A stretch of 64,000 bases of DNA from Macrostomum lignano. Lineage: Eukaryota. How positions within the stretch are numbered: the first letter of the stretch is position 1; every line of letters begins with the position of its first letter. The DNA lies in contig NIVC01000006.1 in assembly GCA_002269645.1 (NCBI GenBank), positions 248,001 through 312,000 of the forward strand, given 5' to 3'. The position numbers and the translations under genes were made by a program. The notes beneath the pieces are model-generated. The model was not told where the DNA came from. It worked only from the letters and a program-made list of their open reading frames with translations, and searched no databases. Below, one piece after another: positions 9,462-58,507 of this stretch.

Positions 9462-9989
9462 TCAGCCCTGGCTGACAGCTGTAGGCCAGTTCGCGCACAG
9501 CCGTTCAATGTCATCCAACGACAGCGAGTCAACCTTGGCGGCGAGAGCGCGGCTAAACATGGCCACATAGGAGTCGGCGTCTGCCGGCGCCATGCCCGGA
9601 TTGTCACGAACAACCCGACGCCGGAGTAGGTCGGCGAATGTCGCTGTTGCTGTTGTTGACGAAGCAGACGGTTTGTCGGTGCCAACATTCGAAGAGTCAG
9701 CGGCAGCCGCGACATGCGCTGGTCCCGATGATTCAGCAGAAGTCGCAGCTTCCTTGACAACCAGAACTAATCGATCGCCGTTTCGAACGCCCAGACTGGA
9801 CAGACTGGCATCAGCGACGTCTGCGGGCACCAGCAGTGGCCGGCCGCGCAGCATCAGGCGCTGATTGGCTGGCGGACAGCCGAACGCTTCAGATACGGCC
9901 CGGTGCAGCTCGGCGAGGCTGGCACCGTCTGGCAGTTCAATGGTGTGCTCACCACCGCGGAGCTGCTTCACTGTCAGGCTGGGCATCAT
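9462..9989 (-). CDS. UBL4A: Ubiquitin-like protein 4A (GET5/GdX homolog), 175 aa, single coding exon
   Basis: N-terminal ubiquitin-like domain (LTVKQLRGGEHTIEL...QRLMLRGRPL...LGVRNGDRLVLVVK). C-terminal segment SLSLDDIERL matches the UBL4A BAG6-binding region (human RLTLDDIERL). Confidence 0.85.
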   Translation of the reverse strand: MMPSLTVKQLRGGEHTIELPDGASLAELHRAVSEAFGCPPANQRLMLRGRPLLVPADVADASLSSLGVRNGDRLVLVVKEAATSAESSGPAHVAAAADSSNVGTDKPSASSTTATATFADLLRRRVVRDNPGMAPADADSYVAMFSRALAAKVDSLSLDDIERLCANWPTAVSQG

Positions 9990-13138: not shown

Positions 13139-16100
13139 TTAGCTAGCCTTGGCCTTGGCTTTGGCAGCAGCGGCAGCGGCGGCAGTGGCAGCAGCGGCGG
13201 CTTTTTTATCCCGCTTTTTAAGCCCGTCAATGTTGCCTTTGAGCAAGCTGGAGAATGCCAATTGGAACCGATTGACATCTTTCTGGTGCACCACTGTGCT
13301 CAGCTTCCGGCTGTTCAGTGTGGCCCGAATCAGGCAGCCGCACTCGCCGCCGCCAGACGATGTGGCATCCCCGGAGCCGCTGCCGCCAGCGCGACGGCGA
13401 GGTTGCCGATTTTTGCGCGGTCTGTGCCGGTCCTGGCCGTCGTCTGCAAGAGTTTTGAATAAAAAATTGTTTGAGATTGGCCCAGGGATTAGCTCATCCA
13501 AGCTGGGGCGAATTTCGAAACGCTGTGGGCTTAAAAAACGTGCGTTATCATTTTCAACAATAAATCGTGATGCCTGTGGGTAAACGGCGGGAGTAACTAG
13601 CAAGTAACTCGTCATCTAATTAGTGCTCGAGGATTAATAACTCCAGGAATTTATCGTTGATAAAATATTAGTTTATACAAAGTTGTTTTCTGTGAAACTT
13701 AACAATAGCAATCCAGACTGCTTAAGGTTTGTGTCTTCTTAGCACTATTATCCCTTCTCTCCTCTCTCAATTCTCTCCTCTCCTCTTATCTAGTACTTTC
13801 TAGTCTCCTCTCTCATATTCTATTCTTTCACCTTTCCTTTATCTGTGATTCTGGCCCGCAGCCATGTGCTGAATTCTTTATCTGGCCCCTGAAGTTGTAG
13901 CACCAATGGGCACACCAGTAAATCATAAAATAAGCTACTTTTGTACAAAATCTATCCCTTTTAGGGTAAGAGAAGATATGTTAACTAATAGGCTACGAGC
14001 ATAATTTGCTTCCTGTCTTTACTTTGGTCTATAAAAGTAGTTTCGATTTGATCTTGAAATTACACGTCAAGTCACTTACATTGCTTCATGGTGATGCGTA
14101 CAGTGCCCGTGCCAGATGACTTTGACTTTTGAAAAAGTTTTGTCAGCTCTGTCAGGAACTAAAATGATATTTTTAGACGATGCATTTTAGTAAACAAATA
14201 TATGCCATACTAAGAATAAATCTACAAACACATGGATATCCTGTAAAGTATGCAGACAAGTCTAATTTTATTGAATGTTATAATTATAATTTTATAGCAG
14301 ATTTTACTAAAGTTGTGGATATTTTAAACCAGCTTCAAGCATACAGGTATGGGAATTTATTTCTTTATCCTTATGGGATGCCAACTACCAAAAGTCAAAA
14401 TTAAGATTTTAAGCCAGCATTGGATCTCATTGGCTAGAGGGACTGGGTTGCTGCACAGAATGACAGGCAATGTCTGTCTAAGACATGCATTGGTAAACTC
14501 TGGTATTTTCCTCTCTCTTCTATTTCCTTAGGTCGTAACTTCTCTTCTCTTCTTCCTCTTCTCATCTCTCTCATCTCTACTCTCTATCTTTCCTTTCTAA
14601 TCTTGTCACTATTCTCTTATATCATATCTTTATTCTTTTATTTCCTTTCCCCTCTTTTTTCTTCATCTCCTCTTTTTACTTATTTCTCTGCCTTTTCTCT
14701 TTTCTCTACTCTCTACTTTCTTATCTCTCTTCTCTCGTTCTTATTCTTCTCTTATATATATATTTTTCTTCTCTTCCCATGTCTTTTCAATTCTCCCTTC
14801 TGTCTTCTCTTCAATGTCTTCTCTTTCTTTTTAACCTTCTCCTTTCATTTCTTTTGCCCTTTTCTCTCCCCTCTCTTTTGTCATTCATTTTCTCATATTT
14901 TTTCTTTTATACACATCTGTTTCCTCACTATTTTCTCATTGTTTATTCTCTTTCTAGCCTGAAGCCATGAGCTAGCCCTAGAGATAAAAGTCTACTAACT
15001 CTGTTCTGAAAGCCTAACTAAATCTAACAAAGTTTAACAAAACCAAAAGCTATAGTAACTAGGTTTCTAGGTATGCAAATGCCATGACATCTTAATTTTC
15101 ATTTGGCATCTTGAATATGGATCCCTGATTTGAAATTGACACTTTGTTTTTAAGATTGATGTCAATCTATAAAACTTCAAAATATTTAGCAAATAAATAA
15201 TACAGTAAATAAAAATTAATTTATTAAGAACTAAATGATATTAAATAAAAAACCAAATAGCTTAAGTCCCAAAACAACTAAAGAACATTTTAACTTTAGC
15301 TATACCTTACAGTTTAGAATCTGAAGGGATTTCCTAGTATAAAAAAGGTTTTTACCATTTATTAGCATATATGACATAGTAGATAAATTGTGTCAAATGA
15401 CTTTTTATATTGGTGTACAAGCCGGCATACAAACAAAGTCGTGTCATTTTTTCCAGCAATAAACCTGGTATACAATAATACAAAATCTGAACTATGGGCT
15501 ATATACTATAGTCTAAATCATGGTAGGCATATACCAGAATGAAATTTCATGTTCTTCAATTTTATGCTAATGTAAATATAAAAAAAATTATGTCAAGCCC
15601 AATATGCCAATTTTTAGAGAATATATATAATTAGAAATATAAAACTTTTACTAAACTTTAAAATAGCTTTTTTGCTAAAAACTAATCTTCTTTCTTCCAA
15701 TTTTGTTTTCCTTGTAAATTGCATTAGTATTTTAAATTTTAGTTTCCAAATAATTTTAGAGCTTTTGTTAGTTGATATTTAACTACATGATTACATTAGC
15801 ATTGTACTTGCCTATTTTTTGTATGCTGACTATGTTCACCTCATGTTGAACCTGAAAATTCTATATGCCAAGTGTATACCAAGATTGTCAGTGAGAGAAA
15901 AAATATGCCAGAATTTTCTGGCATAAAGGCCACCTTCTGGACTATGGTAACTTTATAAAAGGCTTGTTACCAAATTAATTTGCTATTAATTATCACTGAA
16001 TTTGCCTTTACACCAAATTTCTTTATATTAAAATTGTGTTATCATTTTTGTCCCTAAATTTTCCTATATCCATAGTAACAACCATTGGTTATACCATAAT

Positions 16101-19100
16101 TTAGCTTAATGTGTCATTGTTGGATAGGCCCTATACTCTAGATCATGTAGTACATGCCCAAAAATTTGGGGGTGCATTGGCCATGTACAACAAAAGTAAG
16201 CATATATAGTTGGCATGCATCACTCCTAAGAAAAAAGTATATGTTCACACTTAGTTTTTACACTGGGTTTGAATGCCAATACAAAAAAAATTGTCATTTG
16301 ACACAATATATTTGCTATGTCATATATGATAGGAATATATCTTAATATATGCTTAAAATGATAAGACCCTTGTTGCACATTGGGAAATCCCGGCATAATC
16401 TGGGTTTTTTTGCCCAAGACAAGGTGCAAAATTGCACCTTGTGCCAAATTTCAAGGTGTGATTTTAAGGCTCAGAGTGCAATTTCTCTTGTTTCAGAAAA
16501 CTGGGAATATATATATAGACATGTCTTATATAAGGCCATAGGCATTTAGGCTATATGACTTAATAGGTCATAGGAGTTATTTCATTTCATATTTTAAGGC
16601 AGTGCAAATGAGCTTAAGCATGGTTAAGCCTTAAAAAAATAGTTATAAGATCACACCTAAACCGCACCTACTTTTTCAATTTCAAGGTGCAATTTTAAAA
16701 TTTAAGGTGCATACGCACACTGCGCACAAAAAACCCAGCCGGCATATATGTTGCTTTCTCAATTATGGCTGGTAATAATCCATTTAAACAAATCTATGAG
16801 TGCATCAATTTTCTACAATAAATAATATAGCCCAAAAAGCCAAAGAATTAACCAAATTAACTGCCAAAAAGGGTATATTATACAATTCAAAAAAGGTCAT
16901 TTGTTGTTGCAATACAAGCATAGTTTTAAGAATGGGTATATTTCAATTTTTTGGCATGCATTTGTAAACTATTCAATTTTTGTTTATGCGTGCACCCTAT
17001 ATGATCTAGACTATGGGATAGGCCTAGGTGCTGCACAGCAATGACTAAAGTTCTGACTAGAGCTATTGGAAATCAAGATTTGGACCAAGATGAGATTTGA
17101 GATAAGAAAAGTCTACAATTGAAAAATTTTGAGACGAGACAAGATGAGATTAATAAAATATTTAAAAAATATATAATATCTAATTAAAACAAATATACCA
17201 TAGATTAGCAGATCCTTTGAGTCAATTTAAATCACCTTGTTATATGTTTGAAATTATAATAAAAATTTATATTAGTACAAGTTTTTGTCAGCATCTATAA
17301 TGATGTTTGCATTTGCCATTTATTCCAATGATATAAAACTGCTCAACTAACCTAACTTATTATAGAATTTATCTATTTTTAAAAATCTTCTTGCTAAAAT
17401 ATTAAAATAAAAAGCAATGCAGGTTTAAAAATAATATTTGGGTGTTTTGAAAAAATATTTGCCTTTTCCCATTTTTTCTTAATCAAAATTTTTGTTCTTA
17501 TTTGCCTAAGGACCTAAAGGGCAAGGCGTCCAGTATTGGATGAATAATGTAACTATTATTTGTCCAGTACTGGACAGCCTATGCAGAAGCTGAAAAATGG
17601 GGAAAGAAAATTCCCTAAGAAACTAATGCTTTTCCCAGCCCCAATGACCTATGCAGATTTTAAAAACAGTGTCAGACAAATCTAATTGCCTTGTCCAAAA
17701 ATAATAGAATGGAAAATTGAAATTATGTGTTCTCAGCTGCATGTTCAGTATTAGATTCGTCAGTTGCGCCATTGCAAGTAGTGAAAACAATTGCGTAACA
17801 AGAGCAGGCATCAATTGCAAAGTTTAGAGCATAAATTTAAGGGCGTCATAAAATGTTGTACATTATTAGATAGAAATTTTTGCAGACAACTCAAATGTAC
17901 ATATTTATTGAGATCTATTGTGATTAAGGGATTGAGAAACAATGAACAGACTATGTACATTCATAAAGTAGAACATGCCTCTTATCACAAGTTTGCTAAC
18001 ATGCAGACTTCCTTTGAAAATAAAGTTGCAGTCAATTGAAACAATTACCCTCAGTACTCAAATCAGTCCTCTGGCCTCGCGATGCCAAACTTTCGACGCA
18101 CACATGAAGAGAATCGTATCTGGTGCTGCATCCTCTGCTTCCGCAAAGCCGATCGCGTTATTTCAGCTGCTCAGGCAGAACTCATCGAGCAATTTATCCT
18201 GCCAGAATTCTGTCATGCCTACATCCGTAATACTCTGCCAGGAGGCATGTGCAGCTGCTGCAGCAAGAAATTGCAGTCACAGACGTCACCTGTACCGCAA
18301 GAACTGCCTGCTCGACTGCCATACCTTCAAATTGTTGCAGATTTGGAGGTTTTACCACAACTCACACGTGAGCATCCGCACTGCTCCTGCTGTATCTGCC
18401 AGGTAGTTTCCAGCCCATCAAACAAGCGGGTGGCGGTCTGGCACCCATACATGTCTGACAGCAGCCGGGCTAACCATAAATTGCCCCAAGGACGACCTGC
18501 AGAAACAACTCGAAGCCAGGACAGAGACTCGGAGAAGCGCTGCACTAGGTGCCACTCACTTGTGGGCAAAGGCCTAAGGCATGAGTGCAGCGTCTCCAGC
18601 AAGTTGCAGTACCTGCGCACGCTCAGCCCTACATCAAAAGAGCACATCGCTCATGACGTGATGCGTGAAAAGCTAAGAGCAGCAGCAGCATCAGGACATG
18701 GATCAACGGCTTCTATTTCCAGCGCCACCGGTGGCCCACCAATGCAGCTGAGGCATGCAAGTGATTCAAATGAGCAGAGAGCGCTGAGGACCGAGACACT
18801 AGTAACGTTAAAGACATCTCTCAATCTGAGTGACCGGCAGACAAACATGGCAGCCACAATTATCAGGCAGGCGGAGGGCAGTCGTAAGGCCGTGCAACCC
18901 GGACTGCGGGCAGCTCTGGCAGCCGCAGGCAGCATCGCAGAGAGTTTTTTTGAGATGCGGCAGCTCAAATTCACTCAAAAGTCCTCAGGTGGCAGCTTTA
19001 CTGATACCACAAGATGTTCCGTCATATGCCCCGATCTTCAGGGCCTGCTGAGCTTCATTTGCTCAAAGCGAGGATTTAGTGAGTTCGATGTAAGATTGAA

Positions 19101-22100
19101 GCTGGGGATGGACGGAGGTGGTGGCTCGCTAAAAATCTGCCTTAGTGTCGCTCCAGTACTGCCTACCGAACCACAGGCAGAGTCCACACCTAAGAAGCTG
19201 AGCAGGGGGTCGCGAATAAGCAACTTTGGCGTAAAAAAACTGTTTATCATCGCAATTGCTGAGGATGTCCAGGAGAACTATGCAAATGTGCGAGCACTTC
19301 TAGATGAGCTAGACTTGACATCGATTAAGTTCACAGTCGCTTGCGACTTCAAGCTAGCCAACATCCTGTGTGGCCTTCAAAGTCATGCCGCAGCTCATCC
19401 TTGTCTCTACTGTGAGGGGCAGGCACCATGGCAAGTTGCCGGTTCCATAAGAACCCTTGGATCCATTCGTCGGATGGCCACGGCATTCGAGGCTGCTGGT
19501 AGCTGCCAGCAACTGGCAAGAAACTACGCAAGCTGTGTCAGACAGCCTCTTCTCCCTGGGGCTGATTCTACGCCAATGCTGGACCTCGTGCCACCACCAG
19601 AGCTGCACATCATGCTTGGTGTGACCAACAAACTGCTTGATCAGCTGAACTCAGCTTGGGGCGACGACAAGGCATACAAGTGGGCGCATTCAGCTGGAAT
19701 CTGTCGCGAGCAGTACCACGGTGGGTGTCTGGAAGGCCCTGCGTGTGTCAGATTGCTGCTTAAAGCTCAAGAGCTCAAGAGCAACCTGCCATCAAGGCTC
19801 CAGGGCTATGCGTCTGCTCTCATGGCATTCGATGCTGTTCGCCAAGCATGCTTTGGGCAACAGCTGATGAGCGACTTTTGCCAGAAGATTGCCCAGCTGG
19901 AATCCTGCTGCGCTGAACTGAAGCTGGTGCCGACACCTAAGATGCACGCCCTTTTCCACCATGTTCCGGAGTTCTGCGAGCGATTCAACTCAGGCCTTGG
20001 GACCTTCAGTGAGCAGGCAGTCGAGTCTACACACAGCGACTTTCGTTCGACGTGGCAGCGGTTTCGCAGGCCTCTGGGGCATGTGCAGTATGCAGAATGC
20101 CTGCTGCGCGCAGTTGTTAGCTACAATTCCAGCCATATTTGATGTCAAGCATTTTCATGCCTGCCAAGATTTCTAGGATTTAGCTTGTGTACTTAATATC
20201 CATGCGCACTTTATTCCATACGGACATTAGCAATAATAAGTGCATGGTTCTCATTTTATAATATTAATACTAATACAGTTGCACATTCCTTTAATGATTA
20301 AAAATAATATTAAAACTACGAACTTATATTAACATTAATATTATTGATGGGTTTTGCCTTAAATACCTATCATATTACATGTAATTTGCATATAATATAA
20401 AAAATTCATATTACCATTTTTGACAAGGCGATTAGATTTGTCTGACACTGTTTTTGAAATCTGCATAGGTCATTGGGGCTGGGAAAAGCATTAGTTTCTT
20501 TGGGAATTTTCTTTCCCCATTTTTCAGCTTCTGCATAGGCGTGTGGATAAATAAAAGTGAAATTATTTGTCTAGTACCAGCTGAGCTGCGTGAATTTATA
20601 TGCCATTCTGCACATCTTTTTCTAGCTAGGTATACTAATATAATGTTAGAGTGTCTTCCTGATGATCAGTCAGTACTGAGTTTGAATCTATAATGAAGAC
20701 TCTACTCTTTATTGTAACAACTCCAAGTGTTATTGTAATAACTCTAAGTCCTTACTTTGGCATTTGTGTTATAAAGCAGCAAATGTCATTATAAATTTTG
20801 ATTATACTATGATTACTATTTACTGTGAAACCAAAATATACCAATATATATATATAGAACAAAATATAATAGGTAAACATTATATAAAACTTTAGGTATT
20901 TTGCCTTTGGCCTTCAAGGGGGTTTGCCAATTGTGATCCTATAGTATAGCACTATCTAACCATAACAAATATTTTCTGCTTCTAGTCTAAAAGTGAACTA
21001 TATACTACTTTTTTAAATATTCCCTGTATACCTATATTTCACGTTTTTATTATATATCCACGTCTGTACTATACTGGACAAATAACTTCATTGTTATTTA
21101 TTGAATTATCTGGTACTAGACAAATAACTTTACTTTTATTTATCTGGTACCAGACAAATAATAACTGCCAAAAGGCAAAAAAATGAAAGTGAGAAGGTTG
21201 AAAAGAAATAGAAGAAAATGAAAAGAAAACTGAAAAGAGGAAAAGGATTTTTAGCAATCTAAAAAATTCTCAATTTCTTAAATCTTATTTCAAATTTTTT
21301 TACAAAAGTCAAGATTTCTTGAGACAAGATTAAAAAATAATGTCAAGATCTTATCTTGAATCTCATCTCGTTGAGATTTCATGACACCTCTAATTCCAAC
21401 ATTGGAACCCATTTTCAAATCTAATGGCTATGGATCTGGTAGTGCCTTTATAATATAGATAGAACATTATATTTTTCTTTCTACAGTAGTACAGGTGGCT
21501 GATATTAGGATTTTGTTCTAGATAAGACTCAAGACAATATTATAAGTCGTGTTCTGCCATAAAGAGGGTCCATATACTGTAGCCATAGCTGTAAGCAAAA
21601 CTATGGCTTATTCTAATTCTCCATACTCCATAGCCATAGAGACCCCAAAATTACCATATTTCTATAGTTCCTATAGCCATAGCCATAGTTTTAACAAAAA
21701 GTCTAGAAAACAAAATATTTTGAATTAAGAAGATAACCTAGTGCTTAAACAACTGCAAATTAAGTTAGAAAATAAAAGAAACACTCGATTGCCTTTGTAA
21801 GATTATATTTAGTCTTTTTTAAAGCAATAATACTTAATTGTTACTGAAAGTACTAAAACTAAACTTTTTCACATTAATAAAAATTAGAGTTTGCTAGTGT
21901 CTTATTGTAATTTTTAGGTATATTTTATAAGTTTCTAGGTTGATAATACAGTTTACTAAAAGTATCTTTGTTTTACTTTACCTGTTTCTAATATTTTTTC
22001 AATTTTTTAACATTAATAACTACAGCTACGTGAATCTACAGAATGTGACAGCAACTACTATATTTCTGTAGTCATAGCCATAAGAGCAGCTAGCTACCGT

Positions 22101-25790: not shown

Positions 25791-27350
25791 CAGCTGGTAT
25801 TTATTGTAGCTATTCTGTTGTTCTATTTAAATGACCCGCTTGTTTTGCTAGTCATCTCCCATAACTACAACATCAGCCAAAGAGAGAAAACAGTGGAAGG
25901 AGAATCATTGTGGTAACAAAAAGAAAAGTGCAAATAGCTCAAATGCACAGGAAATGATTGCTGCTAGCCTCAGGGCTGCTATATTGATAGCTGTAGCCAC
26001 TAGAAAGATGTCTGTGGTAGAAATGGATCAATTGCATGAACTTTTGGGATGCCCTTTGTATTTGTACTAGCCTACCAAGAATCCTAGATCATGCAGTTGC
26101 AATAAGTGTTCAAGTCACATTAAATCCCATTTTAGTAAATGGACATGCCAACTTCTTACTGACTATTTATGTTCTTAAAATAATATTTAATTCTATAATT
26201 ATACTAGTATAATTTTGTACATGACACAATTTATCATTTTATTAAAAAAATTAGCCCGGGTAATTTACATTGTTGGACATATAAACACAATTTTAGGATG
26301 GCATGAAAAAATAGCCCTTCTTTATTCATATCACTGAACCACTGACATTTGCTTTAGACAATATGATGCTCAAATATAAATAACTTCTTTTTATAGTTTA
26401 GCTTCAATTTATCATTGATAATTTTATTGAAAAGTTATTCATTTGTAAAAAGTCTAGGCATACTTTTTATTCAAATTTGCTTTTCCTATGCATATTAGCA
26501 AGTCATAGGATTATTATTGAAGTCTCTAATATTAAATTTAAATTTTTATACTATTGTCTTATTATCTTTAATCATTTCTAGGTTAGGCTAACAATTAAAA
26601 TAAATTCTTATGATCTTGCATAGCTACATATAATACCTAGGATCAGAATTTGCCTATGCACTTGTATAGTGTCTACATTTTTTAGATTTTCTCCAATAGC
26701 AGCTAAGATGAAAGAAGATGCAATATTTTAACTTAAAGACTTAAAGACTTATTTCTAAGTTGACTATCATTTATACCATTATGCACCCTCTATGCCTTAT
26801 CCTATTTACTATTAAAATCCTAGTATAAATAAACTAAATGCCATTATTTTTTTAATCTATCCTTGTGCAAGTTCATACAAAATCAATTATTGTGATATAA
26901 CCATAGGAGATAGTTTACATTGTATTTAATAATATCAGGGGTATAGTTTGCTATGTATATATATAGTTTTTTCAATCTAATAGTAGCTAATAATATTTAA
27001 ATTGTAGTCTCTTTATTGCTTTTAATTAAAAGATGATGTTTTTTAAAACAATCTTTATCAAAAATTTAAGTCCTCAAAGCTTCCTATCTAGTGTTTAAAA
27101 ATCTACTAATATCATATTCAACCCATCATTTTTAATTAAGCCTAACCTTTGTACCTGTATTTATACTATATAAATGTGGGTGCACTGGTAGCTATATGCA
27201 CAATCTGAATTTTACCTAGCTGGTGCAGTGTTGTTTTCTATAATAATTTGACAGTTGTATGTAAAGAGCCATATTCTTGTAAGAATTGTTCCAAAATTTC
27301 AGCTATAATTTAATAAGCTCTTATTTCTAACAAACTGTTCATGCAGTACA

Positions 27351-27956
27351 ATGGCGGCCAGCGTGCCAAAGTGTCCGCCACATCAGTACTACTATGAGCT
27401 CAGTAAAATGTGCGACAATTGTCCTGAGAAATGTTTGTCTGGTAGTTCAACACCAGAGTGTGAGAGACTGTGGTCTGGCGACTTCTGCCATCCCATCAGT
27501 TCGTCGAGTTTGCCAGTTAAGATGTCCACCAGCTCCCCCAGCCTGGTAACTGGCAATTCCAGTTTAATTACTAACGAGTCCATTTCCAAGACTGGCCCGA
27601 TTGTTGCTGTTGCGGTGTTCAGCGTGATTGCATTGGTCGCAATTGTTGCGGCAATAGTTGCGCTTGTCTGTCGGCACCGGCATCGACAGCGTAAGGCGAA
27701 TGAACAGGTGGACCTGCAAACTACTGATGGCGATCGGGCGGAAGAGGCTGAGAGTCTCAATCCGAACGGACACGCGCCAACTGGCCAGCCAACCACTTCT
27801 TCTCAGCAGCAGACGAAATATCCGGAGGTCCAGCCTCCACAGCCAGACCCAATGAAGGTCACCGGTGTGACAAAAACCAATCCGCCAACATCATTGGAAA
27901 TTGACAGCCAGCCACAGGACTCCACCGCCAGCACCATTGGAAACTCCCAAATCTGA
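27351..27956 (+). CDS. single-CRD TNF-receptor-like membrane protein (BCMA/TACI-type Cys spacing), 201 aa
   Basis: CRD C-x12-C-x2-C-x3-C-x8-C-x8-C, Ser/Thr stalk, TM helix IVAVAVFSVIALVAIVAAIVALVC, basic stop-transfer RHRHRQRK and a Pro/Gln/Thr-rich tail. No signal peptide in this ORF. Confidence 0.7.
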   Translation: MAASVPKCPPHQYYYELSKMCDNCPEKCLSGSSTPECERLWSGDFCHPISSSSLPVKMSTSSPSLVTGNSSLITNESISKTGPIVAVAVFSVIALVAIVAAIVALVCRHRHRQRKANEQVDLQTTDGDRAEEAESLNPNGHAPTGQPTTSSQQQTKYPEVQPPQPDPMKVTGVTKTNPPTSLEIDSQPQDSTASTIGNSQI

Positions 27957-28556
27957 ATTCTAAGGAAGCTAAAGAGTGAAGAAGCACTTTAATAAAATTT
28001 CTTATTCTCGTCTCATCCTACATTCGTAAATCATGTATGTCAATTTGCAAAAATCCACAAATTCTTTCGTCCGAGGTGAATTAAAAAGTTTTTTTAGCTA
28101 TAACGATTCTATTTAGGACAGCTGTCTTTTGGCGAAGTGTCAGCTGTTTCTTGATCTTATCTGCTTAGTGTGTTTCATTCTAAACAGTCAGTGGCAAAAA
28201 CCCTATAAAGAAAATACCTTTCAAACAAAATATTGTTGATCTGGCGAACACTCAATTCTAATCATGCATTGGATAAATAATCAGCGGTCCCAGTGCGTGA
28301 CAACGATTTGCCATCTGCGAACACAGTTGTCACGCACTGCGACCGCTGATTCTTTGCATTGTTTTTCTGTTTGACGATCCTACAGACAATGCATTGTTTG
28401 TAGTAATGGATTGTTGTGCATTAAAAATGTGAATAATGATCGTCAAATTGCTAAACAATGGCGCAGCCATATTTTGCCAGCTGTCTATGGCACAGACTGG
28501 GGCCAGGCCAGAAAGAAATTTAATCCTGCGGGCGGACATATCATTTTAATGAGTCT

Positions 28557-28694
28557 GTAGACAGAGACAGGCAGACACAGACAGACAGGCAGACAGACCG
28601 GCAGGCAGACAGACAGACAGACAGGCAGACAGACAGACAGACAGACACACACGCAGACCGGCAGGCAGACAGACAGACACGCAGACCGGCAGGC

Positions 28695-28731
<37 letters not shown>

Positions 28732-28982
28732 CGCAGACCGGCAGGCAGACAGACAGACACGCAGACCGGCAGGCAGACAGACAGACAGGCAGACAGACAG
28801 ACAGACAGACACGCAGACCGGCAGGCAGACAGACAGACAGGCAGACAGACAGACACGCAGACAGACAGACAGACAGACACGCAGACAGACAGACAGGCAG
28901 ACAGACAGACAGGCAGACAGACAGACAGACAGACAGACACGCAGACCGGCAGGCAGACAGACAGACACGCAGACCGGCAGGC

Positions 28983-29015
<33 letters not shown>

Positions 29016-29202
29016 CGCAGACCGGCAGGCAGACAGACAGACACGCAGACCGGCAGGCAGACAGACAGACAGGCAGACAGACAGACAGACAGACACGCAG
29101 ACCGGCAGGCAGACAGACAGACACGCAGATCGGCAGGCAGACAGACAGACAGACAGACACGCAGACCGGCAGGCAGACAGACAGACACGCAGACCGGCAG
29201 GC

Positions 29203-29243
<41 letters not shown>

Positions 29244-29434
29244 CGCAGACCGGCAGGCAGACAGACAGACACGCAGACCGGCAGGCAGACAGACAGACAG
29301 GCAGACAGACAGACAGACAGACACGCAGACCGGCAGGCAGACAGACAGACACGCAGACCGGCAGGCAGACAGACAGACACGCAGACCGGCAGGCAGACAG
29401 ACAGACAGACAGACAGACACGCAGACCGGCAGGC

Positions 29435-29467
<33 letters not shown>

Positions 29468-30080
29468 CGCAGACCGGCAGGCAGACAGACAGACAGGCAG
29501 GCAGACAGACAGACAGGCAGACAGACAGACAGACAGACACGCAGACCGGCAGGCAGACAGGCAGACAGACAGACAGACAGACACGCAGACCGGCAGGCAG
29601 ACAGACAGACACGCAGACCGGCAGGCAGACAGACAGACACGCAGACAGACAGGCAGACAGACAGACACGCAGACAGACAGGCAGACAGACAGACACGCAG
29701 ACAGACAGGCAGACAGACAGACAGACAGACAGACAGACACGCAGACCGGCAGGCAGACAGACAGACACGCAGACCGGCAGGCAGACAGACAGACACGCAG
29801 ACAGACAGGCAGACAGACAGACACGCAGACAGACAGGCAGACAGACAGACACGCAGACAGACAGGCAGGCAGACAGACAGACAGACAGACACGCAGACCG
29901 GCAGGCAGACAGACAGACACGCAGACCGGCAGGCAGACAGACAGACAGACAGACACGCAGACCGGCAGGCAGACAGACAGACACGCAGACCGGCAGGCAG
30001 ACAGACAGACACGCAGACAGACAGGCAGACAGACAGACACGCAGACAGACAGGCAGACAGACAGACACGCAGACACAGAC
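28557..30080. repeat. (CAGA)n-derived compound minisatellite with acgcagaccggcaggcag motif
   Basis: 1.5 kb of acag/gcag tetramers interrupted by a recurring acacgcagaccggcaggcag block. Confidence 0.97.
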
Positions 30081-30520
30081 AATGAAGGCAATGTAAAACC
30101 TTGAAAAGAAGCTTTTGCAAAAAATGGATACCCCGTTTTTTTATTTGACAGCAAATGCCTGACCTCAAAGGAAATTTGCAAGTGCAGCTTGAGTCCATCA
30201 GGCTTCATTTGATTTCATTCATAGATTTTAAAGATCACTGTAAGTAAAATGACATACCAACTCAAAATTAGGACAATTTCAATTTGAAAACTCTGTGGCT
30301 AAAGGCCGTTTGATCGCAAATTTATTTTTATGATGCTTTTTAGCGAGTTTAGGCCTTGTAAAATGTAATTTCATAATAAAACTGGTACAGCTAGAGTATT
30401 ATTATCATAAATAATAGTTTCTAAACCGCCTCATGCTGTCGAGTTCTTTATTTTTAAGTATCGGTGAACAAGAGTGACAAGTGACTTCACAACTTTACTT
30501 GTTTGTATTTTTGTCCGTAT

Positions 30521-31225
30521 CAAGGAATAGGGACTGTCTGTCAGGACTCAGGGAATGGGGACTGTCTGTATCAGGGAATAGGGGGTGTCTGTGTCAGGGA
30601 ATAGGGGGTGTCTGTATCAGGGAATGGGGACTGTCTGTATCAGGGAATAGGGACTGTCTGTATCAGGGAATAAGGGGTGTCTGTATCAGGGAATAGGGGG
30701 TGTCTGTATCAGGGAATAAGGGGTGTCCGTGTCAGGGAATAGGGGGTGTCTGTATCAGGGAATAGGGGGTGTCCGTGTCAGGGAATAGGGGGTGTCTGTA
30801 TCAGGGAATAAGGGGTGTCCGTGTCAGGGAATAGGGGGTGGCTGTATCAGGGAATAGGGACTGTCTGTATCAGGGAATAGGGACTGTCTGTATCAGGGAA
30901 TAGGGACTGTCTGTATCAGGGAATAGGGGGTGTCTGTATCAGGGAATAGGGGGTGGCTGTATCAGGGAATAGGGACTGTCTGTATCAGGGAATAGGGGGT
31001 GTCTGTATCAGGGAATAGGGGGTGGCTGTATCAGGGAATAGGGACTGTCTGTATCAGGGAATAGGGGGTGTCTGTATCAGGGAATAGGGGGTGGCTGTAT
31101 CAGGGAATAGGGACTGTCTGTATCAGGGAATAGGGGGTGTCTGTATCAGGGAATAGGGACTGTCTGTATCAGGGAATAGGGGGTGTTTGTATCAGGGAAT
31201 AGGGGTGGCTGTATAAGGGAATAGG
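30521..31225. repeat. ~23-bp minisatellite (tcagggaatagggggtgtctgta), ~30 copies
   Basis: Direct tandem units ending about 60 bp upstream of the splice acceptor at 31284. Confidence 0.96.
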
Positions 31226-31284
31226 AAGTGTTTGCAAAATGTTATTGAGCTTCAAACATATGCAAACTTTGTTCCCGCTTTCAG

Positions 31285-32013
31285 AAGTGGCAGTTTTGTC
31301 TCCTGTTGCTGGGTTGCTCAGTCTCTGTGTCCGCACGGAGGGACTGCCAGCCAGACGAATACTTTAACAAAATCACTTATTTGTGCGATAAATGCCCGCC
31401 AGAATGTCTGAAAGCTGGTCCCGCACCTGACATTTGCGAACAGAAACGTGCAAATGGGTATTGCTTGGCTCTGATTGCCAGCACTACAACAGCATCAGGT
31501 AGCGATGCCAGCTCGACTCAATCATCCAGTTCTACTGGCGGAGAATCTAAAAATATCGAACTAATTGCTTTGTTAGCATTCTTTATCGTCGTATTTACTG
31601 CTGTTGTCGTTTGGATCGCGTATACTCAACTAAATCGATGTAGAAGTAACAGTCAAGCCGATAATAGCACCCCAGATTCTTCTGATACAACAGGCGGAGC
31701 TAGCATTCCCCTACTGCCTCAGAATCCAGATTCAGAACCAACTGCACCTCCCAATGATACTGGAGGTAATAATGCTCAACCTAGCGATGTCGAAAATCCT
31801 GGCGGCGAAGGGGGCGCTGAGGCTCCTGGCAACGACGATCAGAAGACCTCCGATAAAGCTGGCACGTCTTCAAACGGAATGTCAGCGGAAGCTACGGACA
31901 ATGATGGCGGCGGAGCTTCTTCCTCCCCGCAACCGCCCAGCGATCGGGGAAATCAAGTTGTTGATGTTATGAATCGTAAGGACGAAGGATATCGCGAGCC
32001 CAAGCCGAACTAA
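31285..32013 (+). CDS. second single-CRD TNF-receptor-like membrane protein (main exon; start exon not located)
   Basis: Acceptor ctttcag| at 31284 opens KWQFCLLLLGCSVSVSA (signal-peptide-like). CRD C-x12-C-x2-C-x3-C-x9-C-x8-C, S/T stalk, TM LIALLAFFIVVFTAVVVWIAY and a disordered tail, with stop at 32011-32013. Confidence 0.7.
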   Translation, partial: KWQFCLLLLGCSVSVSARRDCQPDEYFNKITYLCDKCPPECLKAGPAPDICEQKRANGYCLALIASTTTASGSDASSTQSSSSTGGESKNIELIALLAFFIVVFTAVVVWIAYTQLNRCRSNSQADNSTPDSSDTTGGASIPLLPQNPDSEPTAPPNDTGGNNAQPSDVENPGGEGGAEAPGNDDQKTSDKAGTSSNGMSAEATDNDGGGASSSPQPPSDRGNQVVDVMNRKDEGYREPKPN

Positions 32014-33288
32014 ATTTGAGCTTCTTAAAGATTCATCACTAAAAGTTTGTGACAAATTAGTCTCAGAATGGAAGCGGTGTGCAGGAGCTTTGCTGTCAGG
32101 TCCGATCTGTCTATGACTGACTAGACTCCATTGCGTTTCTATGTTAGACTAGCTTTAATATTTTCATGTATGATTGAATTGTTTGCTAACTTTGCCTGTG
32201 TTGTCCTGGCAGCATTAACTCAATTATATTAAAAATGACACGCTCAATGTCTTGCGGATCAGTTACGAAAGGCTTTCGGGATTAAGTTGACATACCCTTG
32301 GAATATAAGATTAGATGTAACCAGATGTCTTAGCTTACATCTATCTCGATGTAGCCTACGTCTTTGTCTAAGTCTATCTCCATGTGGCTTTTAGTCTAAA
32401 CCTAGGACAGGAGAATGGGGTTTTTAGGGTAGGCAGGATTCCTGATCACGGATCACTTCATTTCTGACACTTGGTGCCGATTCTTTCATCGAATTATCTC
32501 TGGCTTTGTTGTCTATGGCCTGACCTGACAGTTAATTTGAGACAAATTTTAAACTTTTTAAGCCAAATCTATTTTTGTTACTTTGTAAGTACAGCCTTTG
32601 TGTTTTATTCTAGGAATGTTCTCACCCATTTATTTAAAAAAAACTTTTAATTTTAAAATTTTAGCTGAAAAAATCTATTGTGGCCAATTTGTTGTCTTTC
32701 TACAATATCAATGATGTTAACATTTGTATCAAGCAACAAATGCTAAAAATTAAAAGCTATTGTTTCTTATTCAATAATTTTTTTATTGCCCAATTGCCCA
32801 ATCGGTGACTAAAAGTTTGCTCATTATCTTAAATTTTATTTTTACTTGCCAAATGTCAAAGGCGCCAATACTCGATAGCTTCCTGTGTTACAAATATTTC
32901 AGAATTCTTGAGTGCATTACTCGTAGTAGTATCTTTTGCTCATGTATATTAGCTTTATTGTAAATGACATTATTCTTATCCAGTAATAGGCTTAGTTAGC
33001 TGTTTATTCATTCGAGGCTAAGAGCCTTTTAAATATACATGCCTTTTACATGCCTTTGTTTTAAGGTGTTAATGTTTTGCCTATGCTTATGTACATTTAA
33101 ATATTACAGATGTTCCACATATCTGAAAGTATGACCTACTTGTTTAATTCTATTTGAGTTTAAAACTAATACAATTATTTTTGTTAAAAATACGATAAAA
33201 CATGCTAAAAATATTGAAGACAATACTTGCACACATTTTGTTTCGATCTGTTGGTTCTTTTTTGTACAGTTTATGCTGATTAAGTACT

Positions 33289-55770: not shown

Positions 55771-58507
55771 TCAAGCCGTTGCCTCTTGACTTTGACCTTC
55801 TTTGTCATCCGACTCCGACTGCTGCTGAGACTGCAGCAGCAGCAGTTTGCTGGGATTAAAGTACAAATTCGAGGATCTGTACACCAGAGCCCAGATGTAC
55901 GGTATAAAGAACTCGTCTGGCGATTCCTCTTCAACGTATTTGTACTTTGGTTCGGGGAATTTTTTCAGCCTGTCCCGACGAAAGTTGCGACTTCGTTCTT
56001 CGATGACTCGCATGACCCGGTGCTCGGAGAGCTGATTCTGATGCTCAGAGCTGCTCTCACCCAGAGCCGAAGTGAAATGATGCATCACTGTGCCCAAGTT
56101 CTGCAGAATGTCTTGGAAAGCGGGGTGAGTAGAGAATGGCTGATACAGCTCCCTCTGGTGCAGCTGGGTATACACCAGGTGGGGATTCTCCGCCAACCGG
56201 TGGGTCAAAGCGTTATTAACAATCTCAAGGATGCAGCGCATCAGATCCTCAACTGAGGCCCGGTCAGCCTCCAGCTCAGCCATATTGGCTGGCCTACTCC
56301 GCATCTCATCAACCAGTTTCCTCTGCTTCTTGGCCAGGTGAGCGAACAGGCCAAGTAGCTTCTGACAGGCGTACGGATGCAGGCCGGCAAAGTACGTAGA
56401 CATGTTAGCCAGAGCTGCCAGGCAGTTGGTGTGCAGGTATTTATCGCGAGTCCGGCCAACATTCAGCTGAACAGTGCGGCAAAGTACAATGGCTAGCAGG
56501 CTGCCCAGAGACACCAAGCCAAGATGACGCTCGGTGAACCAGCCCGACACGCTGGCTGGCTGCAGCTGGATCTCGTGAACTCTGGTGCAGAACTGCTGGC
56601 ACTCGGTTAGCATTAGCAGTACGATTAGGGCCATGTACACCTGTCAGGCGGTTGGGGCTTTGTGATTAGGGTTAGTCCTACTGTTGGTCTGTCTGTCTCT
56701 GTGTTAGTTTCTGTCTTGTCTGGTTTTATTGTCTGTCCTTATTGTCCGTGTTGTCTTGTCTTTGTGCCTGTCCTTAGTGTCCGTGTTGTCTTGTCTTTGT
56801 GCCTGTCCTTAATGTCCTTGTTGTCTTGTCTTTGTGCCTGTCCTTAATGTCCTTGTTGTCTTGTTTTTGTGTCTGTTCTTAGTGTCCGTGTTGTCTTGTC
56901 TTTGCGCCTGTCCTTAATGTCAGTGTTGTCTTGTCTTAGTGCCTGTCCTTAGTGTCTGTGTCGTATAGTCTTAATGTCTGTTTGCCTGCCCTAGTGCTGT
57001 TTGTCTTGCCATATTGTCTATTTTGTCTTTTATTCTTGCCTGTTTGTCCGTCTTTTTTCCAGGTATCTCTCTGATTTGTCTTAGTGTCTCTTTTATTTAA
57101 TTTTAGTGTCTTCGAGCCTTAGTGTTTGTCTGTCTGTCAATCCGTGTTTAACCGCCCACCCCCGCCTCTCACCTGATGCGAGCTCTTCTGAGCCTCGGAG
57201 TGCAGAGTTCGCAGTATGGGCAGCAGCAGGCCAGCGAGCTGGGAGTCGTCTCCGCCCTGCCTGCCAACGTAGCCCCTGAACTGCAGACCACCGGCCGAGT
57301 GCAGCAGCAGATACAGCATCAACAGGGCTTCATCTCTAGGCAGCCTATCGCAGATGGCCTTCAACAATAGATTGAAATCTACTCGGAAACTAATCAGATT
57401 ACTAGCGGCTGATGACAAATGCTCAACATTGCCCGGATCATTGGCATGGGCGCAGCTGAGCAGGGCCTCTCGATAAGGATTGCGGAACCGCCTGGCCCCG
57501 GCGCAGTGATTTGCCAGCACCAGAGACAGCAGGCAGCTCTGATCGGCCAGCAGGCCAGTGCGGAGCTGAGCTCGCTGCTCAGCAGCCGGGTTGGAGCCGT
57601 AGCCCAGAGTGACCATGGACCACAGGCCGGATGCCAGACTATTATAAAGGCCGGCTGATCCACCAGCATTGACCAGCATTCTATCGGGAGCTGGCGGCCG
57701 CTGCACATAGTATTTCAATAGCACCTCCATCAGGCGGAAGGCGTGCATAGAGCAGCGGCCGGTGTACAGGATCTGGTAGAAGGTCAGCTTCTCAGCCGGC
57801 TCAGTTCGGTACATCTGAACGCTGAGCAGCACTAGAAGGCTGCACACACTTTCGTACACAACAGGAAATGTTGACTCGCGAACCGGGAGCACCACTAGCA
57901 AGTGTACAAGAGCTTCTATCAGCTCTTCAACCATGGTGGCGTCCGCCTCGGATGAGGAATTCGATTCGTCGCTTTCGTCACCGCTGTTGTCGTCCTCTTC
58001 AAGGTCGCGCTTGCTGGTGGCAGCTGAGGCGTCGCCCTGACTCTGGCGCTGCTGATTGAGCAGCCTTCGCTGATGCAGCTGCTTGTCTGGACAGTGCTCA
58101 ATCTGAGTCAGCAGCAACTCATCGCTCAATTGCTCAACCAGGTGTTTAATTATACAACGCGAGATGAACAGAGCATTGTAGAGCTGCATCAGGAATATGT
58201 CACTTTGACGCCCATCAGCCAGTGGTTCGAGTACAAACTGTTGCAGATTGGAAACCATGGTAACTAATACTCTGAGCAGGCTATTGAGATTGCCAGATGA
58301 GACATTATTAACAGTGAAAGTGGTTAGAAGGTTGGCCGTTTGTTCCTCGAGCAGTTTAGCATCTGTACTGGTGACTGGCGGTACAAAAGCATAGCTAAGC
58401 AGCTGGTTCCAATAGGGATCATTGCTGGAGATTGGCTGCTTGCCGCACAGTCGGATTAAGTACTCATTTGAGGACAGCTCTGCCAGTGAGCTACTGTTGG
58501 CACCCAT
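55771..58507 (-). CDS. DYM: Dymeclin, 734 aa, 2 exons
   Basis: Exon 1 is 57173-58507 (MGANSS..NEYL..L.G...IS.NDPYWNQLLSY; donor cag|gtgaga). Exon 2 is 55771-56640 (VYMALIVLLMLTE...RDKYLHTNCLAALANMS...LKKFPEPKYKYVEEESPDEFFIPYIWALVY). Phase 0 join SSHQ|VYMAL. Confidence 0.96.
56690..57000. repeat. 35-bp minisatellite (tgtctttgtgcctgtccttaatgtccttgttgtct) in the dymeclin intron
   Basis: About 8 degenerate units inside intron 56641-57172. Confidence 0.9.

What the first reader, a model, noticed from the sequence alone, without database searches (positions are those of the whole stretch)
27351..32013. Tandem pair of BCMA/TACI-like single-CRD TNF-receptor candidates
Both ORFs encode one six-Cys domain, a S/T stalk, one TM helix and a disordered tail without a death domain. 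Gene 1 spacing (C-x12-C-x2-C-x3-C-x8-C) equals human BCMA ([30 protein letters not shown]) for the first five Cys, including the QY/EYF aromatic motif. BCMA, TACI and BAFF-R are regarded as vertebrate B-cell receptors; Drosophila Grindelwald is the known invertebrate single-CRD analog. The two paralogs are strongly diverged outside the Cys, and the ligand-binding DxL hairpin is YEL or NKI. This points to an undescribed, fast-evolving invertebrate TNFR subfamily.
Basis: partly seen in the sequence, partly recalled or inferred. Interest (0 to 1): 0.72.

Follow-up and report, generated by a model that had tools for sequence, protein, structure and literature searches.

The report
Flatworm pair of TNF-receptor-like genes
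Two neighbouring genes of the flatworm Macrostomum lignano encode small membrane proteins whose single cysteine-rich outer domain looks like that of TNF receptors, but the resemblance is weak, so they are plausible and unproven extra members of a receptor type already known in invertebrates.

Summary
The window is Macrostomum lignano DNA. It carries two same-strand paralogous genes (28% identity, E 6e-11). Each encodes one six-Cys domain, a Ser/Thr-rich stalk, one TM helix and a low-complexity tail. The pair recurs in two other assembled copies, and NCBI annotates the products only as hypothetical proteins.

One correction: gene 2 has no ATG here. A paralogous copy has ATG where the window has CAG. 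That CAG completes a spliced-leader acceptor (TTTCAG) in frame, and the flatworm leader ends in AUG. Either start gives a signal peptide.

The TNF-receptor reading is partly supported:
- The Cys spacing fits a canonical TNFR domain.
- The first module resembles EDAR CRD1 and BCMA beyond the cysteines.
- Low-confidence AlphaFold models of both paralogs retrieve human BCMA as the best PDB match.

None of this is statistically significant. Pfam, PDB sequence searches and an exhaustive search of 1.8 billion proteins found no relative outside this species.

Specific BCMA/TACI kinship is not shown. The C5-C6 spacing is 8 rather than 3, the DxL motif is absent, and there is no TRAF motif or death domain.

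Single-CRD TNFRs are already known in invertebrates. These are probably new members of a known kind, of moderate interest.

The parts
27304..27309 (+). TATAAT, a candidate TATA box about 35-40 nt upstream of the 5' end of the annotated gene 1 model
   Evidence: Read from the sequence. The NCBI model starts 6 nt before the ATG. The upstream stretch 26847-27334 is 99.6% identical to paralog L001, against 96.7% for the whole block. Its function is inferred.
27351..27956 (+). Gene 1 CDS, 201 aa, with no signal peptide (predicted type III membrane protein)
   Evidence: ORF. It is 100% identical to the M. lignano hypothetical protein models P0001 and P0002. The paralog in L001 has dN/dS 0.44. GC is 0.53 against flanks of 0.26-0.38.
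27372..27488 (+). Gene 1 cysteine-rich domain, Cys 8, 21, 24, 28, 37 and 46 (spacing 12/2/3/8/8)
   Evidence: The AlphaFold model has a hairpin at 12-15/20-23 plus two helices, pLDDT 61. The best Foldseek PDB hits are human BCMA at E about 1.
27600..27671 (+). Gene 1 transmembrane helix (residues 84-107), followed by the basic stretch CRHRHRQRK
   Evidence: Kyte-Doolittle maximum of 3.15 over a 19-residue window. The basic cluster after the helix places the tail in the cytoplasm; that orientation is inferred.
27991..27996 (+). AATAAA polyadenylation signal candidate for gene 1, 35 nt after the stop codon
   Evidence: Read from the sequence.
28565..30075 (.). Intergenic minisatellite (period 28/80, AGAC-rich). 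It creates long spurious ORFs on the minus strand and is largely absent from paralog L001.
30548..31225 (.). Second intergenic minisatellite (period 23), just upstream of gene 2
   Evidence: It is also present in L001 and L002.
31279..31284 (+). TTTCAG, which matches the M. lignano spliced-leader acceptor motif [T/C]TNCAG. Its CAG occupies the position of the gene 2 start codon (ATG in L001, CTG in L002).
   Evidence: Alignment and L002 sequence. The SL sequence ends in ATG and the acceptor motif is given in PMC8629364. The flatworm SL AUG can act as the initiator. Use of this acceptor is inferred, not shown.
31285..32013 (+). Gene 2 reading frame, 242 codons with no ATG of its own. With an initiator Met it is 243 aa and has the signal peptide MKWQFCLLLLGCSVSVSA.
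   Evidence: It is 99% identical to model Mlig007169g1 and 91% to Mlig007597g2.
31345..31464 (+). Gene 2 cysteine-rich domain, Cys 22, 35, 38, 42, 52 and 61 (spacing 12/2/3/9/8)
   Evidence: There are no nonsynonymous differences from paralog L001 within this domain. The AlphaFold model has pLDDT 63, and 71-80 over the first 20 residues. The 13 best Foldseek hits are human BCMA, E 0.16-2.
31561..31623 (+). Gene 2 transmembrane helix (residues 94-114)
   Evidence: Kyte-Doolittle maximum of 3.06.
32228..32233 (+). ATTAAA, a candidate variant polyadenylation signal for gene 2
   Evidence: Read from the sequence. This is a weak inference.

Best explanation
The window holds a tandem pair of lineage-specific Macrostomum lignano genes. 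Each encodes a small single-pass membrane protein.

Architecture (shown):
- Each protein has an N-terminal extracellular domain that is a single TNF-receptor-type cysteine-rich domain, a glycosylatable Ser/Thr-rich stalk, one TM helix and a disordered cytoplasmic tail.
- The domain starts with an A1-type beta-hairpin carrying the C-x4-Y motif. A second module follows with two more predicted disulfides. The inferred pairing is 1-2, 3-5, 4-6.
- Gene 1 has no signal peptide, so its own TM helix must translocate the N-terminus (type III), as in BCMA.
- Gene 2 is type I. In this copy its genomic start codon is replaced by a spliced-leader acceptor, so the AUG at the end of the leader most likely supplies the initiator Met.

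Function (inferred):
- The hairpin and the second module dock in the groove between protomers of one of the worm's trimeric TNF/Eiger-like ligands.
- That would cluster three receptors and bring their tails together.
- The tails have no TRAF consensus and no death domain. Signalling would therefore be non-canonical, for example through the class I PDZ-ligand-like C-terminus -SQI of gene 1, as Grindelwald uses Veli. Alternatively the proteins act as co-receptors or decoys.

Ligand binding and signalling are not shown by anything here.
For: - Organism and gene reality.
- Paralogy.
- Architecture.
- Cys framework: gene 2 matches the PROSITE TNFR/NGFR pattern (recalled from memory) and gene 1 misses it at one non-Cys position. 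The C-x4-Y motif and the 12/2/3/8-9/8 spacing are present in both.
- Similarity beyond the cysteines: gene 2 against EDAR CRD1, p 5e-5; gene 2 against BCMA, p 0.003; gene 1 against EDAR CRD1, p 0.005. A control between two true family members, BCMA against EDAR, gives p 0.0009.
- EDAR is the top PDB sequence hit for gene 2 and for the two-gene profile.
- Two separately predicted paralog models both show a hairpin plus two helices. Both rank human BCMA first among 350,542 PDB chains, followed by BR3, TACI, TNFR2, 4-1BB and Grindelwald.
- The gene 2 CRD has no nonsynonymous change between copies, while the rest of the protein has 19.5. All 3 indels are in frame.
- M. lignano encodes canonical TNF ligands: 4 in the genome plus 6 from RNA-seq (PMC7519573), or 6 Eiger homologs (bioRxiv 10.1101/2024.07.27.603686).
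- Spliced-leader start.
Against: - No statistically significant match to any TNFR. Pfam is empty even with the CRDs alone. PDB sequence E values are 0.15 or worse. Foldseek E values are 0.16 or worse.
- The AlphaFold models are low confidence (pLDDT 61-63, from a two-sequence alignment). They may simply echo the Cys spacing, so they are not independent of it.
- The shuffle p-values are post hoc, because the comparison partners were chosen after the searches.
- No homolog was found outside M. lignano.
- The tails contain no TRAF2 or TRAF6 consensus and no death domain.
- Gene 2 diverges from its paralog at about the neutral rate (dN/dS 1.1) and has no ATG of its own here.
- The NCBI models of gene 2 start 21 nt downstream of the proposed acceptor, so they do not confirm it.
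- The PROSITE pattern was recalled from memory.
Confidence: 0.5

Rival explanations
1. These are orphan, lineage-specific mucin-like membrane proteins. Their small disulfide-rich head only converges on TNFR-like Cys spacing. They do not bind TNF ligands and may serve adhesion, glycocalyx or some other Macrostomum-specific role.
For: No significant sequence, profile or structure match to any family. No TRAF motif or death domain. The stalks are Ser/Thr-rich and the tails are low-complexity and fast-evolving. Short Cys-rich modules in EGFR, the insulin receptor and Meckelin also appear among the weak Foldseek hits.
Against: Similarity to the EDAR and BCMA A1 modules exceeds chance once the Cys framework is fixed. 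TNFR-family chains fill the top ranks for both paralog models, while non-TNFR hits align over only about 20 columns at E of 5 or more. The overall architecture matches BCMA, Fn14, Grindelwald and Wengen.
Confidence: 0.3
2. The gene 2 copy in this window is a decaying duplicate. It lost its start codon (ATG in L001, CTG in L002, CAG here) and now drifts neutrally. Only gene 1, and the gene 2 copy on the paralogous contig, would be functional.
For: Three different triplets occupy the start position in the three copies. dN/dS is about 1.1, and coding divergence of about 3.3% equals the flanking noncoding divergence. The near-identical locus L002 also carries a frameshifted gene 1 model, P0002. 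M. lignano is a hidden polyploid with redundant copies (PMC10468722, abstract listed).
Against: The frame is intact over 242 codons. Indels against the paralog are in frame, and the CRD has no nonsynonymous change. The CAG creates a consensus SL acceptor exactly in frame, and the flatworm SL AUG is an established initiator. At 3% divergence, an intact frame is only weak evidence either way.
Confidence: 0.2
3. The ORFs are chance open frames in repeat-rich DNA, not genes.
For: The window is full of minisatellites that generate long spurious ORFs, for example 28485-30208 on the minus strand.
Against: The two ORFs lie outside the arrays and are not repetitive. They form GC islands, with a chance of no stop codon of 2e-4 and 6e-6. 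They are conserved as a pair in three loci with in-frame indels. They are mutually homologous at E 6e-11. They have NCBI gene models.
Confidence: 0.02

Closest known systems
Human BCMA (TNFRSF17)
   Same: It has a single six-Cys CRD starting at residue 8 with no signal peptide (like gene 1). The spacing of the first five cysteines is identical (12/2/3/8), and the aromatic EYF/QYY motif follows C1. The protein then has a short stalk, one TM helix and a tail without a death domain. It is the best Foldseek PDB match for both paralog models.
   Different: C5-C6 spacing is 3 in BCMA (D2 module) and 8 here. The DxL ligand-binding motif is replaced by YEL or NKI. There is no significant sequence similarity. 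Gene 2 has a signal peptide. BCMA's tail has TRAF-binding sites (established knowledge), and none are recognisable here.
Canonical TNFR CRD (A1-B2), e.g. EDAR CRD1
   Same: EDAR CRD1 is the best PDB sequence hit: '[20 protein letters not shown]' against 'DCQPDEYFNKITYLCDKCPP'. Gene 2 fits the full six-Cys PROSITE signature, including the 7-9 residue C5-C6 spacing.
   Different: EDAR has several CRDs and a death domain. Here there is one CRD and none. The E value is only 0.15-0.23. The AlphaFold models make the second module helical, as in BCMA's D2, rather than B2-like, but at low confidence.
Drosophila Grindelwald
   Same: It is an invertebrate single-CRD receptor with a signal peptide, a TM helix and no death domain, and its homology to other TNFRs is poor. 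It shares the CXXCXXXC signature used to define grnd-like receptors. Its fold is a hairpin plus two helices. The -SQI C-terminus of gene 1 recalls Grindelwald's use of a PDZ partner, Veli.
   Different: Grindelwald has 8 cysteines in an X2-C2 arrangement with nested disulfides; these proteins have 6 in A1-type spacing. Foldseek aligns only 18 columns to 6zt0 at E 6. Grindelwald has a defined Traf2-binding region.
Drosophila Wengen and the 'wgn-like' invertebrate receptors
   Same: [quoted passage not shown] A preprint reports 16 wgn-like proteins in M. lignano.
   Different: Wengen's CRD lies about 78-201 residues from the N-terminus, not at residue 8.
Human Fn14 (TNFRSF12A)
   Same: It has a single CRD, a signal peptide, a very small ectodomain, and 12/2 spacing of the first three cysteines.
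   Different: Its spacing is 12/2/2/8/2 with a C2 module. There is no residue similarity beyond the cysteines (p 0.7).

Membership tests
TNF receptor superfamily (defined by the CRD) | Six-Cys CRD with A1-type first module (C-x4-[FYH]...C) and canonical spacing (PROSITE PS00652, recalled from memory) | tested here: met
   Gene 2 residues 22-61 match the full pattern. Gene 1 matches except for Gly at the polar -3 position before C6.
TNF receptor superfamily (defined by the CRD) | Significant match to a curated TNFR profile (Pfam TNFR_c6, BCMA-Tall_bind, TACI-CRD2, Fn14) or to a solved TNFR sequence | tested here: not met
   Pfam lists no TNFR family at E up to 10, for either the full proteins or the CRDs alone. 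The best PDB sequence hit is EDAR at E 0.15-0.23.
TNF receptor superfamily (defined by the CRD) | CRD fold: N-terminal beta-hairpin plus a second module, with disulfides 1-2, 3-5 and 4-6 | tested here: inconclusive
   The AlphaFold models show a hairpin plus two helices, but pLDDT is 61-63. TNFR chains lead Foldseek for both models, but E is 0.16 or worse. Disulfide geometry could not be inspected.
TNF receptor superfamily (defined by the CRD) | Single-pass membrane protein with the CRD outside the cell | tested here: met
   Each protein has one hydrophobic segment followed by basic residues. Gene 2 has a signal peptide; gene 1 has a short N-terminal ectodomain of type III kind. The topology is predicted, not measured.
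TNF receptor superfamily (defined by the CRD) | Binds a trimeric TNF-family ligand | not testable with these tools
   Published work reports TNF ligands in M. lignano. No complex prediction or binding assay was available.
TNF receptor superfamily (defined by the CRD) | Cytoplasmic death domain or TRAF-binding motif | tested here: not met
   No Pfam death domain. No [PSAT]x[QE]E, PxQxxD, PxQx[TS] or PxExx[Ar/Ac] motif in either tail. Wengen also lacks these, so this feature is not strictly required.
BCMA/TACI/BAFF-R subgroup | A1-D2 CRD with short C5-x3-C6 spacing | tested here: not met
   C5-C6 is 8 residues in both genes, against 3 in BCMA and in TACI CRD2.
BCMA/TACI/BAFF-R subgroup | DxL motif at the hairpin tip that contacts BAFF/APRIL | tested here: not met
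   The aligned residues are YEL in gene 1 and NKI in gene 2 (gapless Cys-anchored alignment).
BCMA/TACI/BAFF-R subgroup | Type III topology, with no signal peptide | tested here: inconclusive
   Gene 1 starts MAASVPKC with no hydrophobic leader in either copy examined. Gene 2 has a signal peptide.
Grindelwald family | Eight-Cys X2-C2 CRD with nested disulfides in the C2 module (PMC8024323) | tested here: not met
   There are only six cysteines, in A1-type spacing. Foldseek aligns 18 columns to 6zt0 at E 6.2.
Grindelwald family | CXXCXXXC signature in a single CRD, with a TM helix within about 80-120 residues (criteria of bioRxiv 10.1101/2024.07.27.603686) | tested here: met
   The signature is CDNCPEKC in gene 1 and CDKCPPEC in gene 2. 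The TM helix starts about 40 residues after the CRD. That preprint counts one Grnd homolog in M. lignano. Whether it is one of these two genes is unknown.
Wengen-like receptors | Sequence similarity to the Wengen CRD | not tested

The most novel reading that the evidence does not exclude
Both proteins are genuine receptors for the otherwise unpaired TNF ligands of M. lignano. They would represent a flatworm lineage of minimal, BCMA-like receptors: an A1 hairpin plus a helical second module, with one paralog of type III. That would mean the 'vertebrate B-cell' minimal-receptor architecture either predates vertebrates or arose twice. One paralog would also depend on the spliced-leader AUG for its start codon after losing its own ATG.
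Probability: 0.2. Interest if true: 0.55.

Novelty: new member of a known kind. Interest (0 to 1): 0.35.

Why it matters
M. lignano is a regeneration and stem-cell model with RNAi and transgenesis. It is one of the few flatworms that kept endogenous TNF ligands (PMC7519573).

One survey found a single NGFR-like TNFR in this species (PMC7519573). A later preprint found 16 Wengen-like and 1 Grindelwald-like receptors (bioRxiv 10.1101/2024.07.27.603686).

If these two proteins are extra ligand-binding receptors that standard profiles miss, the worm's TNF receptor repertoire has been under-counted. The ligand-receptor pairing could then be tested directly in a tractable animal. It would also be another case, after Grindelwald, of a TNFR that can be recognised only by its Cys framework and fold.

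If they are not TNFRs, the finding is an ordinary pair of orphan membrane proteins. The start-codon observation is a small, clean example of a genomic ATG exchanged for a spliced-leader acceptor.

Tried and rejected
Searches that found nothing useful:
- Pfam on the full proteins and on the CRDs alone. It returned only sub-threshold TM and low-complexity noise (Cadherin_C_2, EphA2_TM, SARAF) and no TNFR family.
- Exact-protein lookup of the two window ORFs. They are not on record as such, because the database models start at other codons.
- Word-index homology searches with each protein. They returned only M. lignano copies. The same search with the CRD alignment found no candidates.
- An exhaustive HMMER search of 1.84 billion representatives with the two-sequence CRD profile. 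It found only the M. lignano proteins plus four repeat or low-complexity artefacts (P0005-P0008). Their Pfam content (TUTase, and FAM165 or CpxA fragments with no stretch passing on its own) shows they are unrelated.
- A literature search for the three gene identifiers.

Readings I rejected:
- An EGF, furin-like or other Cys-rich fold. EGFR, insulin receptor, LDLR and Meckelin appear only at E of 5 or more, over about 20 aligned columns, below all the BCMA chains.
- Fn14-like. There is no residue similarity beyond the cysteines (p about 0.7).
- Grindelwald-type X2-C2. The Cys count and pattern are wrong.
- The long minus-strand ORFs between the genes. They are translations of a minisatellite.
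- The bacterial promoter and terminator scan, which is not meaningful for this eukaryote.

Left open:
- The TRAF motif scan was negative.
- The operon reading is borderline. The repeat-adjusted intergenic distance is about 1.1 kb, against a 1 kb threshold.

Full report
**Source and context**

The window is genomic DNA of the free-living flatworm Macrostomum lignano. Gene 1 is 100% identical to the NCBI model 'hypothetical protein BOX15_Mlig032005g1'. Gene 2 is 99% identical to BOX15_Mlig007169g1.

The surroundings are ordinary and very rich in minisatellites. Nearby genes are a ubiquitin-like gene, SRP14 and dymeclin.

**The observation**

Gene 1 (27351-27956, 201 aa):
- It begins MAASVPKC, with no hydrophobic leader.
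- Its cysteines are at 8, 21, 24, 28, 37 and 46.
- The stalk is 43% Ser/Thr and has two N-glycosylation sequons.
- One TM helix spans residues 84-107 and is followed by CRHRHRQRK.
- The tail is 94 residues, rich in Pro, Gln, Thr and Ser, and ends in -SQI.

Gene 2:
- It has the same layout, with cysteines spaced 12/2/3/9/8, a stalk of 52% Ser/Thr, a TM helix at 94-114 and an acidic Gly/Asp/Ser/Asn-rich tail.

The two proteins are paralogs: 28% identity over the CRD, stalk and TM helix, E 6e-11.

Its spacing is 12/2/3/8/3.

**Are they genes?**

Yes, on four grounds:
- They are GC islands (0.53 and 0.49) in flanks of 0.26-0.38 GC. The probability of no stop codon by chance is 2e-4 and 6e-6.
- The tandem pair recurs on two other contigs of assembly GCA_002269645.1. 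L002 is 98.6% identical over 9.4 kb. L001 is 91-97% identical in the aligned unique blocks and largely lacks the first intergenic array.
- Between the window and L001, all three indels in the coding regions are multiples of three.
- Gene 1 has a TATAAT about 35-40 nt upstream of the annotated 5' end, an A at -3 and G at +4 around the ATG, and an AATAAA 35 nt after the stop codon.

**Correction on gene 2**

The window copy has no ATG. In L001 the frame starts ATG AAG TGG..., giving MKWQFCLLLLGCAVSVSA|RRDC, a typical signal peptide.

At that same triplet L002 has CTG and the window has CAG. The window's CAG completes TTTCAG, which fits the M. lignano spliced-leader acceptor motif [T/C]TNCAG. The next base, 31285, is in frame.

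The 35-nt M. lignano leader ends in ATG (PMC8629364). The 3' AUG of flatworm leaders is an established initiator methionine (Cheng et al. 2006, cited in PMC12582326; see also PMC10468722). Trans-splicing at 31284/31285 would therefore restore exactly the same protein.

This is inferred, not shown. The NCBI models of all gene 2 copies start 21 nt further downstream and are flagged partial. That neither confirms nor excludes the acceptor.

The alternative is that this copy is losing function. Its dN/dS against L001 is about 1.1, and its divergence equals that of the flanking noncoding DNA. However, the 40-residue CRD carries none of the 19.5 nonsynonymous changes.

**Is the domain a TNFR CRD?**

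Sequence searches are negative in the strict sense:
- Pfam lists no TNFR family, even with the CRDs alone.
- An exhaustive profile search of 1.84 billion representative proteins found only M. lignano proteins and repeat artefacts.
- The word-index search with the alignment found no candidates.

Several weak lines nevertheless point the same way:

1. Gene 2 matches the whole PROSITE TNFR/NGFR signature as I recall it, and gene 1 fails at one non-Cys position. BCMA, TACI CRD2 and Fn14 do not match it, because their last spacing is short. On Cys spacing, then, the domains are canonical A1-B2 rather than BCMA-type A1-D2.

2. The top PDB sequence hit for gene 2 and for the two-gene profile is EDAR CRD1 (E 0.23 and 0.15).

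3. I held the cysteines fixed and shuffled the other residues. Gene 2 resembles EDAR CRD1 (p 5e-5) and BCMA (p 0.003), and gene 1 resembles EDAR CRD1 (p 0.005). BCMA against EDAR, two true family members, gives p 0.0009. Neither gene resembles Fn14. These p-values are post hoc.

4. AlphaFold models of the two CRDs were each built from only a two-sequence alignment and have pLDDT 61 and 63. Both give a beta-hairpin followed by two short helices. From general knowledge, BCMA and TACI CRD2 have this layout. Grindelwald is described the same way in PMC8024323.

5. Foldseek against 350,542 PDB chains ranks human BCMA chains 1-12 for gene 1 and 1-13 for gene 2.
   - For gene 2 the best E is 0.16, probability reaches 0.69, and RMSD is about 3 Å over 28 columns.
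   - BR3, TACI, TNFR2, 4-1BB and Grindelwald follow.
   - No hit is significant.
   - The models are not independent of the Cys spacing.

**What is not supported**

Specific kinship to BCMA, TACI or BAFF-R is not supported. The C5-C6 spacing is 8 rather than 3. The DxL motif is absent. Gene 2 is type I.

The tails have no TRAF2 or TRAF6 consensus and no death domain.

The proteins are not of the Grindelwald type either. Grindelwald has eight cysteines in an X2-C2 arrangement.

**What is already known**

Single-CRD TNFRs exist in invertebrates. A 2026 version of a bioRxiv preprint catalogues 336 Wengen-like and 115 Grindelwald-like receptors across invertebrates. It names a single CRD with CXXCXXXC as the predominant form, and counts 6 Eiger, 16 Wgn and 1 Grnd homologs in M. 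lignano.

Both genes here carry CXXCXXXC (CDNCPEKC and CDKCPPEC). Whether either one is that single Grnd hit cannot be told from the text held.

Bertevello et al. found one NGFR-like TNFR and canonical TNF ligands in M. lignano.

**Verdict**

The TNFR-type reading is plausible, at about 0.5 for the full mechanism, but unproven. The BCMA label describes a look-alike, not family membership.

If the proteins are real TNFRs, they are new members of a known kind. The family as detectable here is two paralogs in three genomic copies of one polyploid species.

Noticed in passing
window 31279-31287; L001 9974-9985; L002 5977-5985: The gene 2 start-codon triplet differs in the three assembled copies: ATG in L001, CTG in L002 and CAG in the window. 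The window version creates a consensus spliced-leader acceptor, TTTCAG, exactly in frame, so the leader's terminal AUG could replace the lost genomic ATG.
   Followed up: partly
window 28485-30208 (minus strand): Three overlapping ORFs of 527-555 aa ('CLSVCLSV...') are translations of the AGAC-rich minisatellite at 28565-30075, not genes. The array is largely missing from paralog L001.
   Followed up: yes
L002 2045-2554 (protein P0002): The gene 1 copy on contig NIVC01002691 is frameshifted after residue 124 of the window protein, giving a 169-aa model with an unrelated C-terminus. This is either an assembly indel or a degenerating copy.
   Followed up: no
window 26847-27334: About 490 bp upstream of gene 1 differ from paralog L001 at only 2 positions (99.6%). 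The coding region is 98.4% identical and the whole block 96.7%. The stretch contains TATAAT at 27304-27309 and may be a conserved promoter or regulatory region.
   Followed up: partly
window 18082-20142 (+): A 686-aa single-exon ORF in a GC-rich island has no Pfam match. It has Cys/His-rich N-terminal motifs and His-rich C-terminal motifs that recall a domesticated or transposon-derived protein. It was not identified.
   Followed up: no
window 9462-9989 (-), 13139-13615 (-), 55771-56640 and 57137-58507 (-): Ordinary housekeeping genes lie nearby: a ubiquitin-family ORF, SRP14, and two large exons of dymeclin.
   Followed up: partly
whole window: Minisatellite density is unusually high. About 25 distinct arrays (47 Tandem Repeats Finder rows) have periods mostly between 19 and 43 bp and lengths of 0.4-1.6 kb. 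They account for most of the long ORFs in the mechanical list.
   Followed up: no
window 27942-27953: Gene 1 ends in -NSQI, which fits the class I PDZ-ligand consensus ([ST]-x-hydrophobic at the C-terminus). The ending is identical in the paralogous copy. This is of interest because Grindelwald signals partly through the PDZ protein Veli.
   Followed up: no
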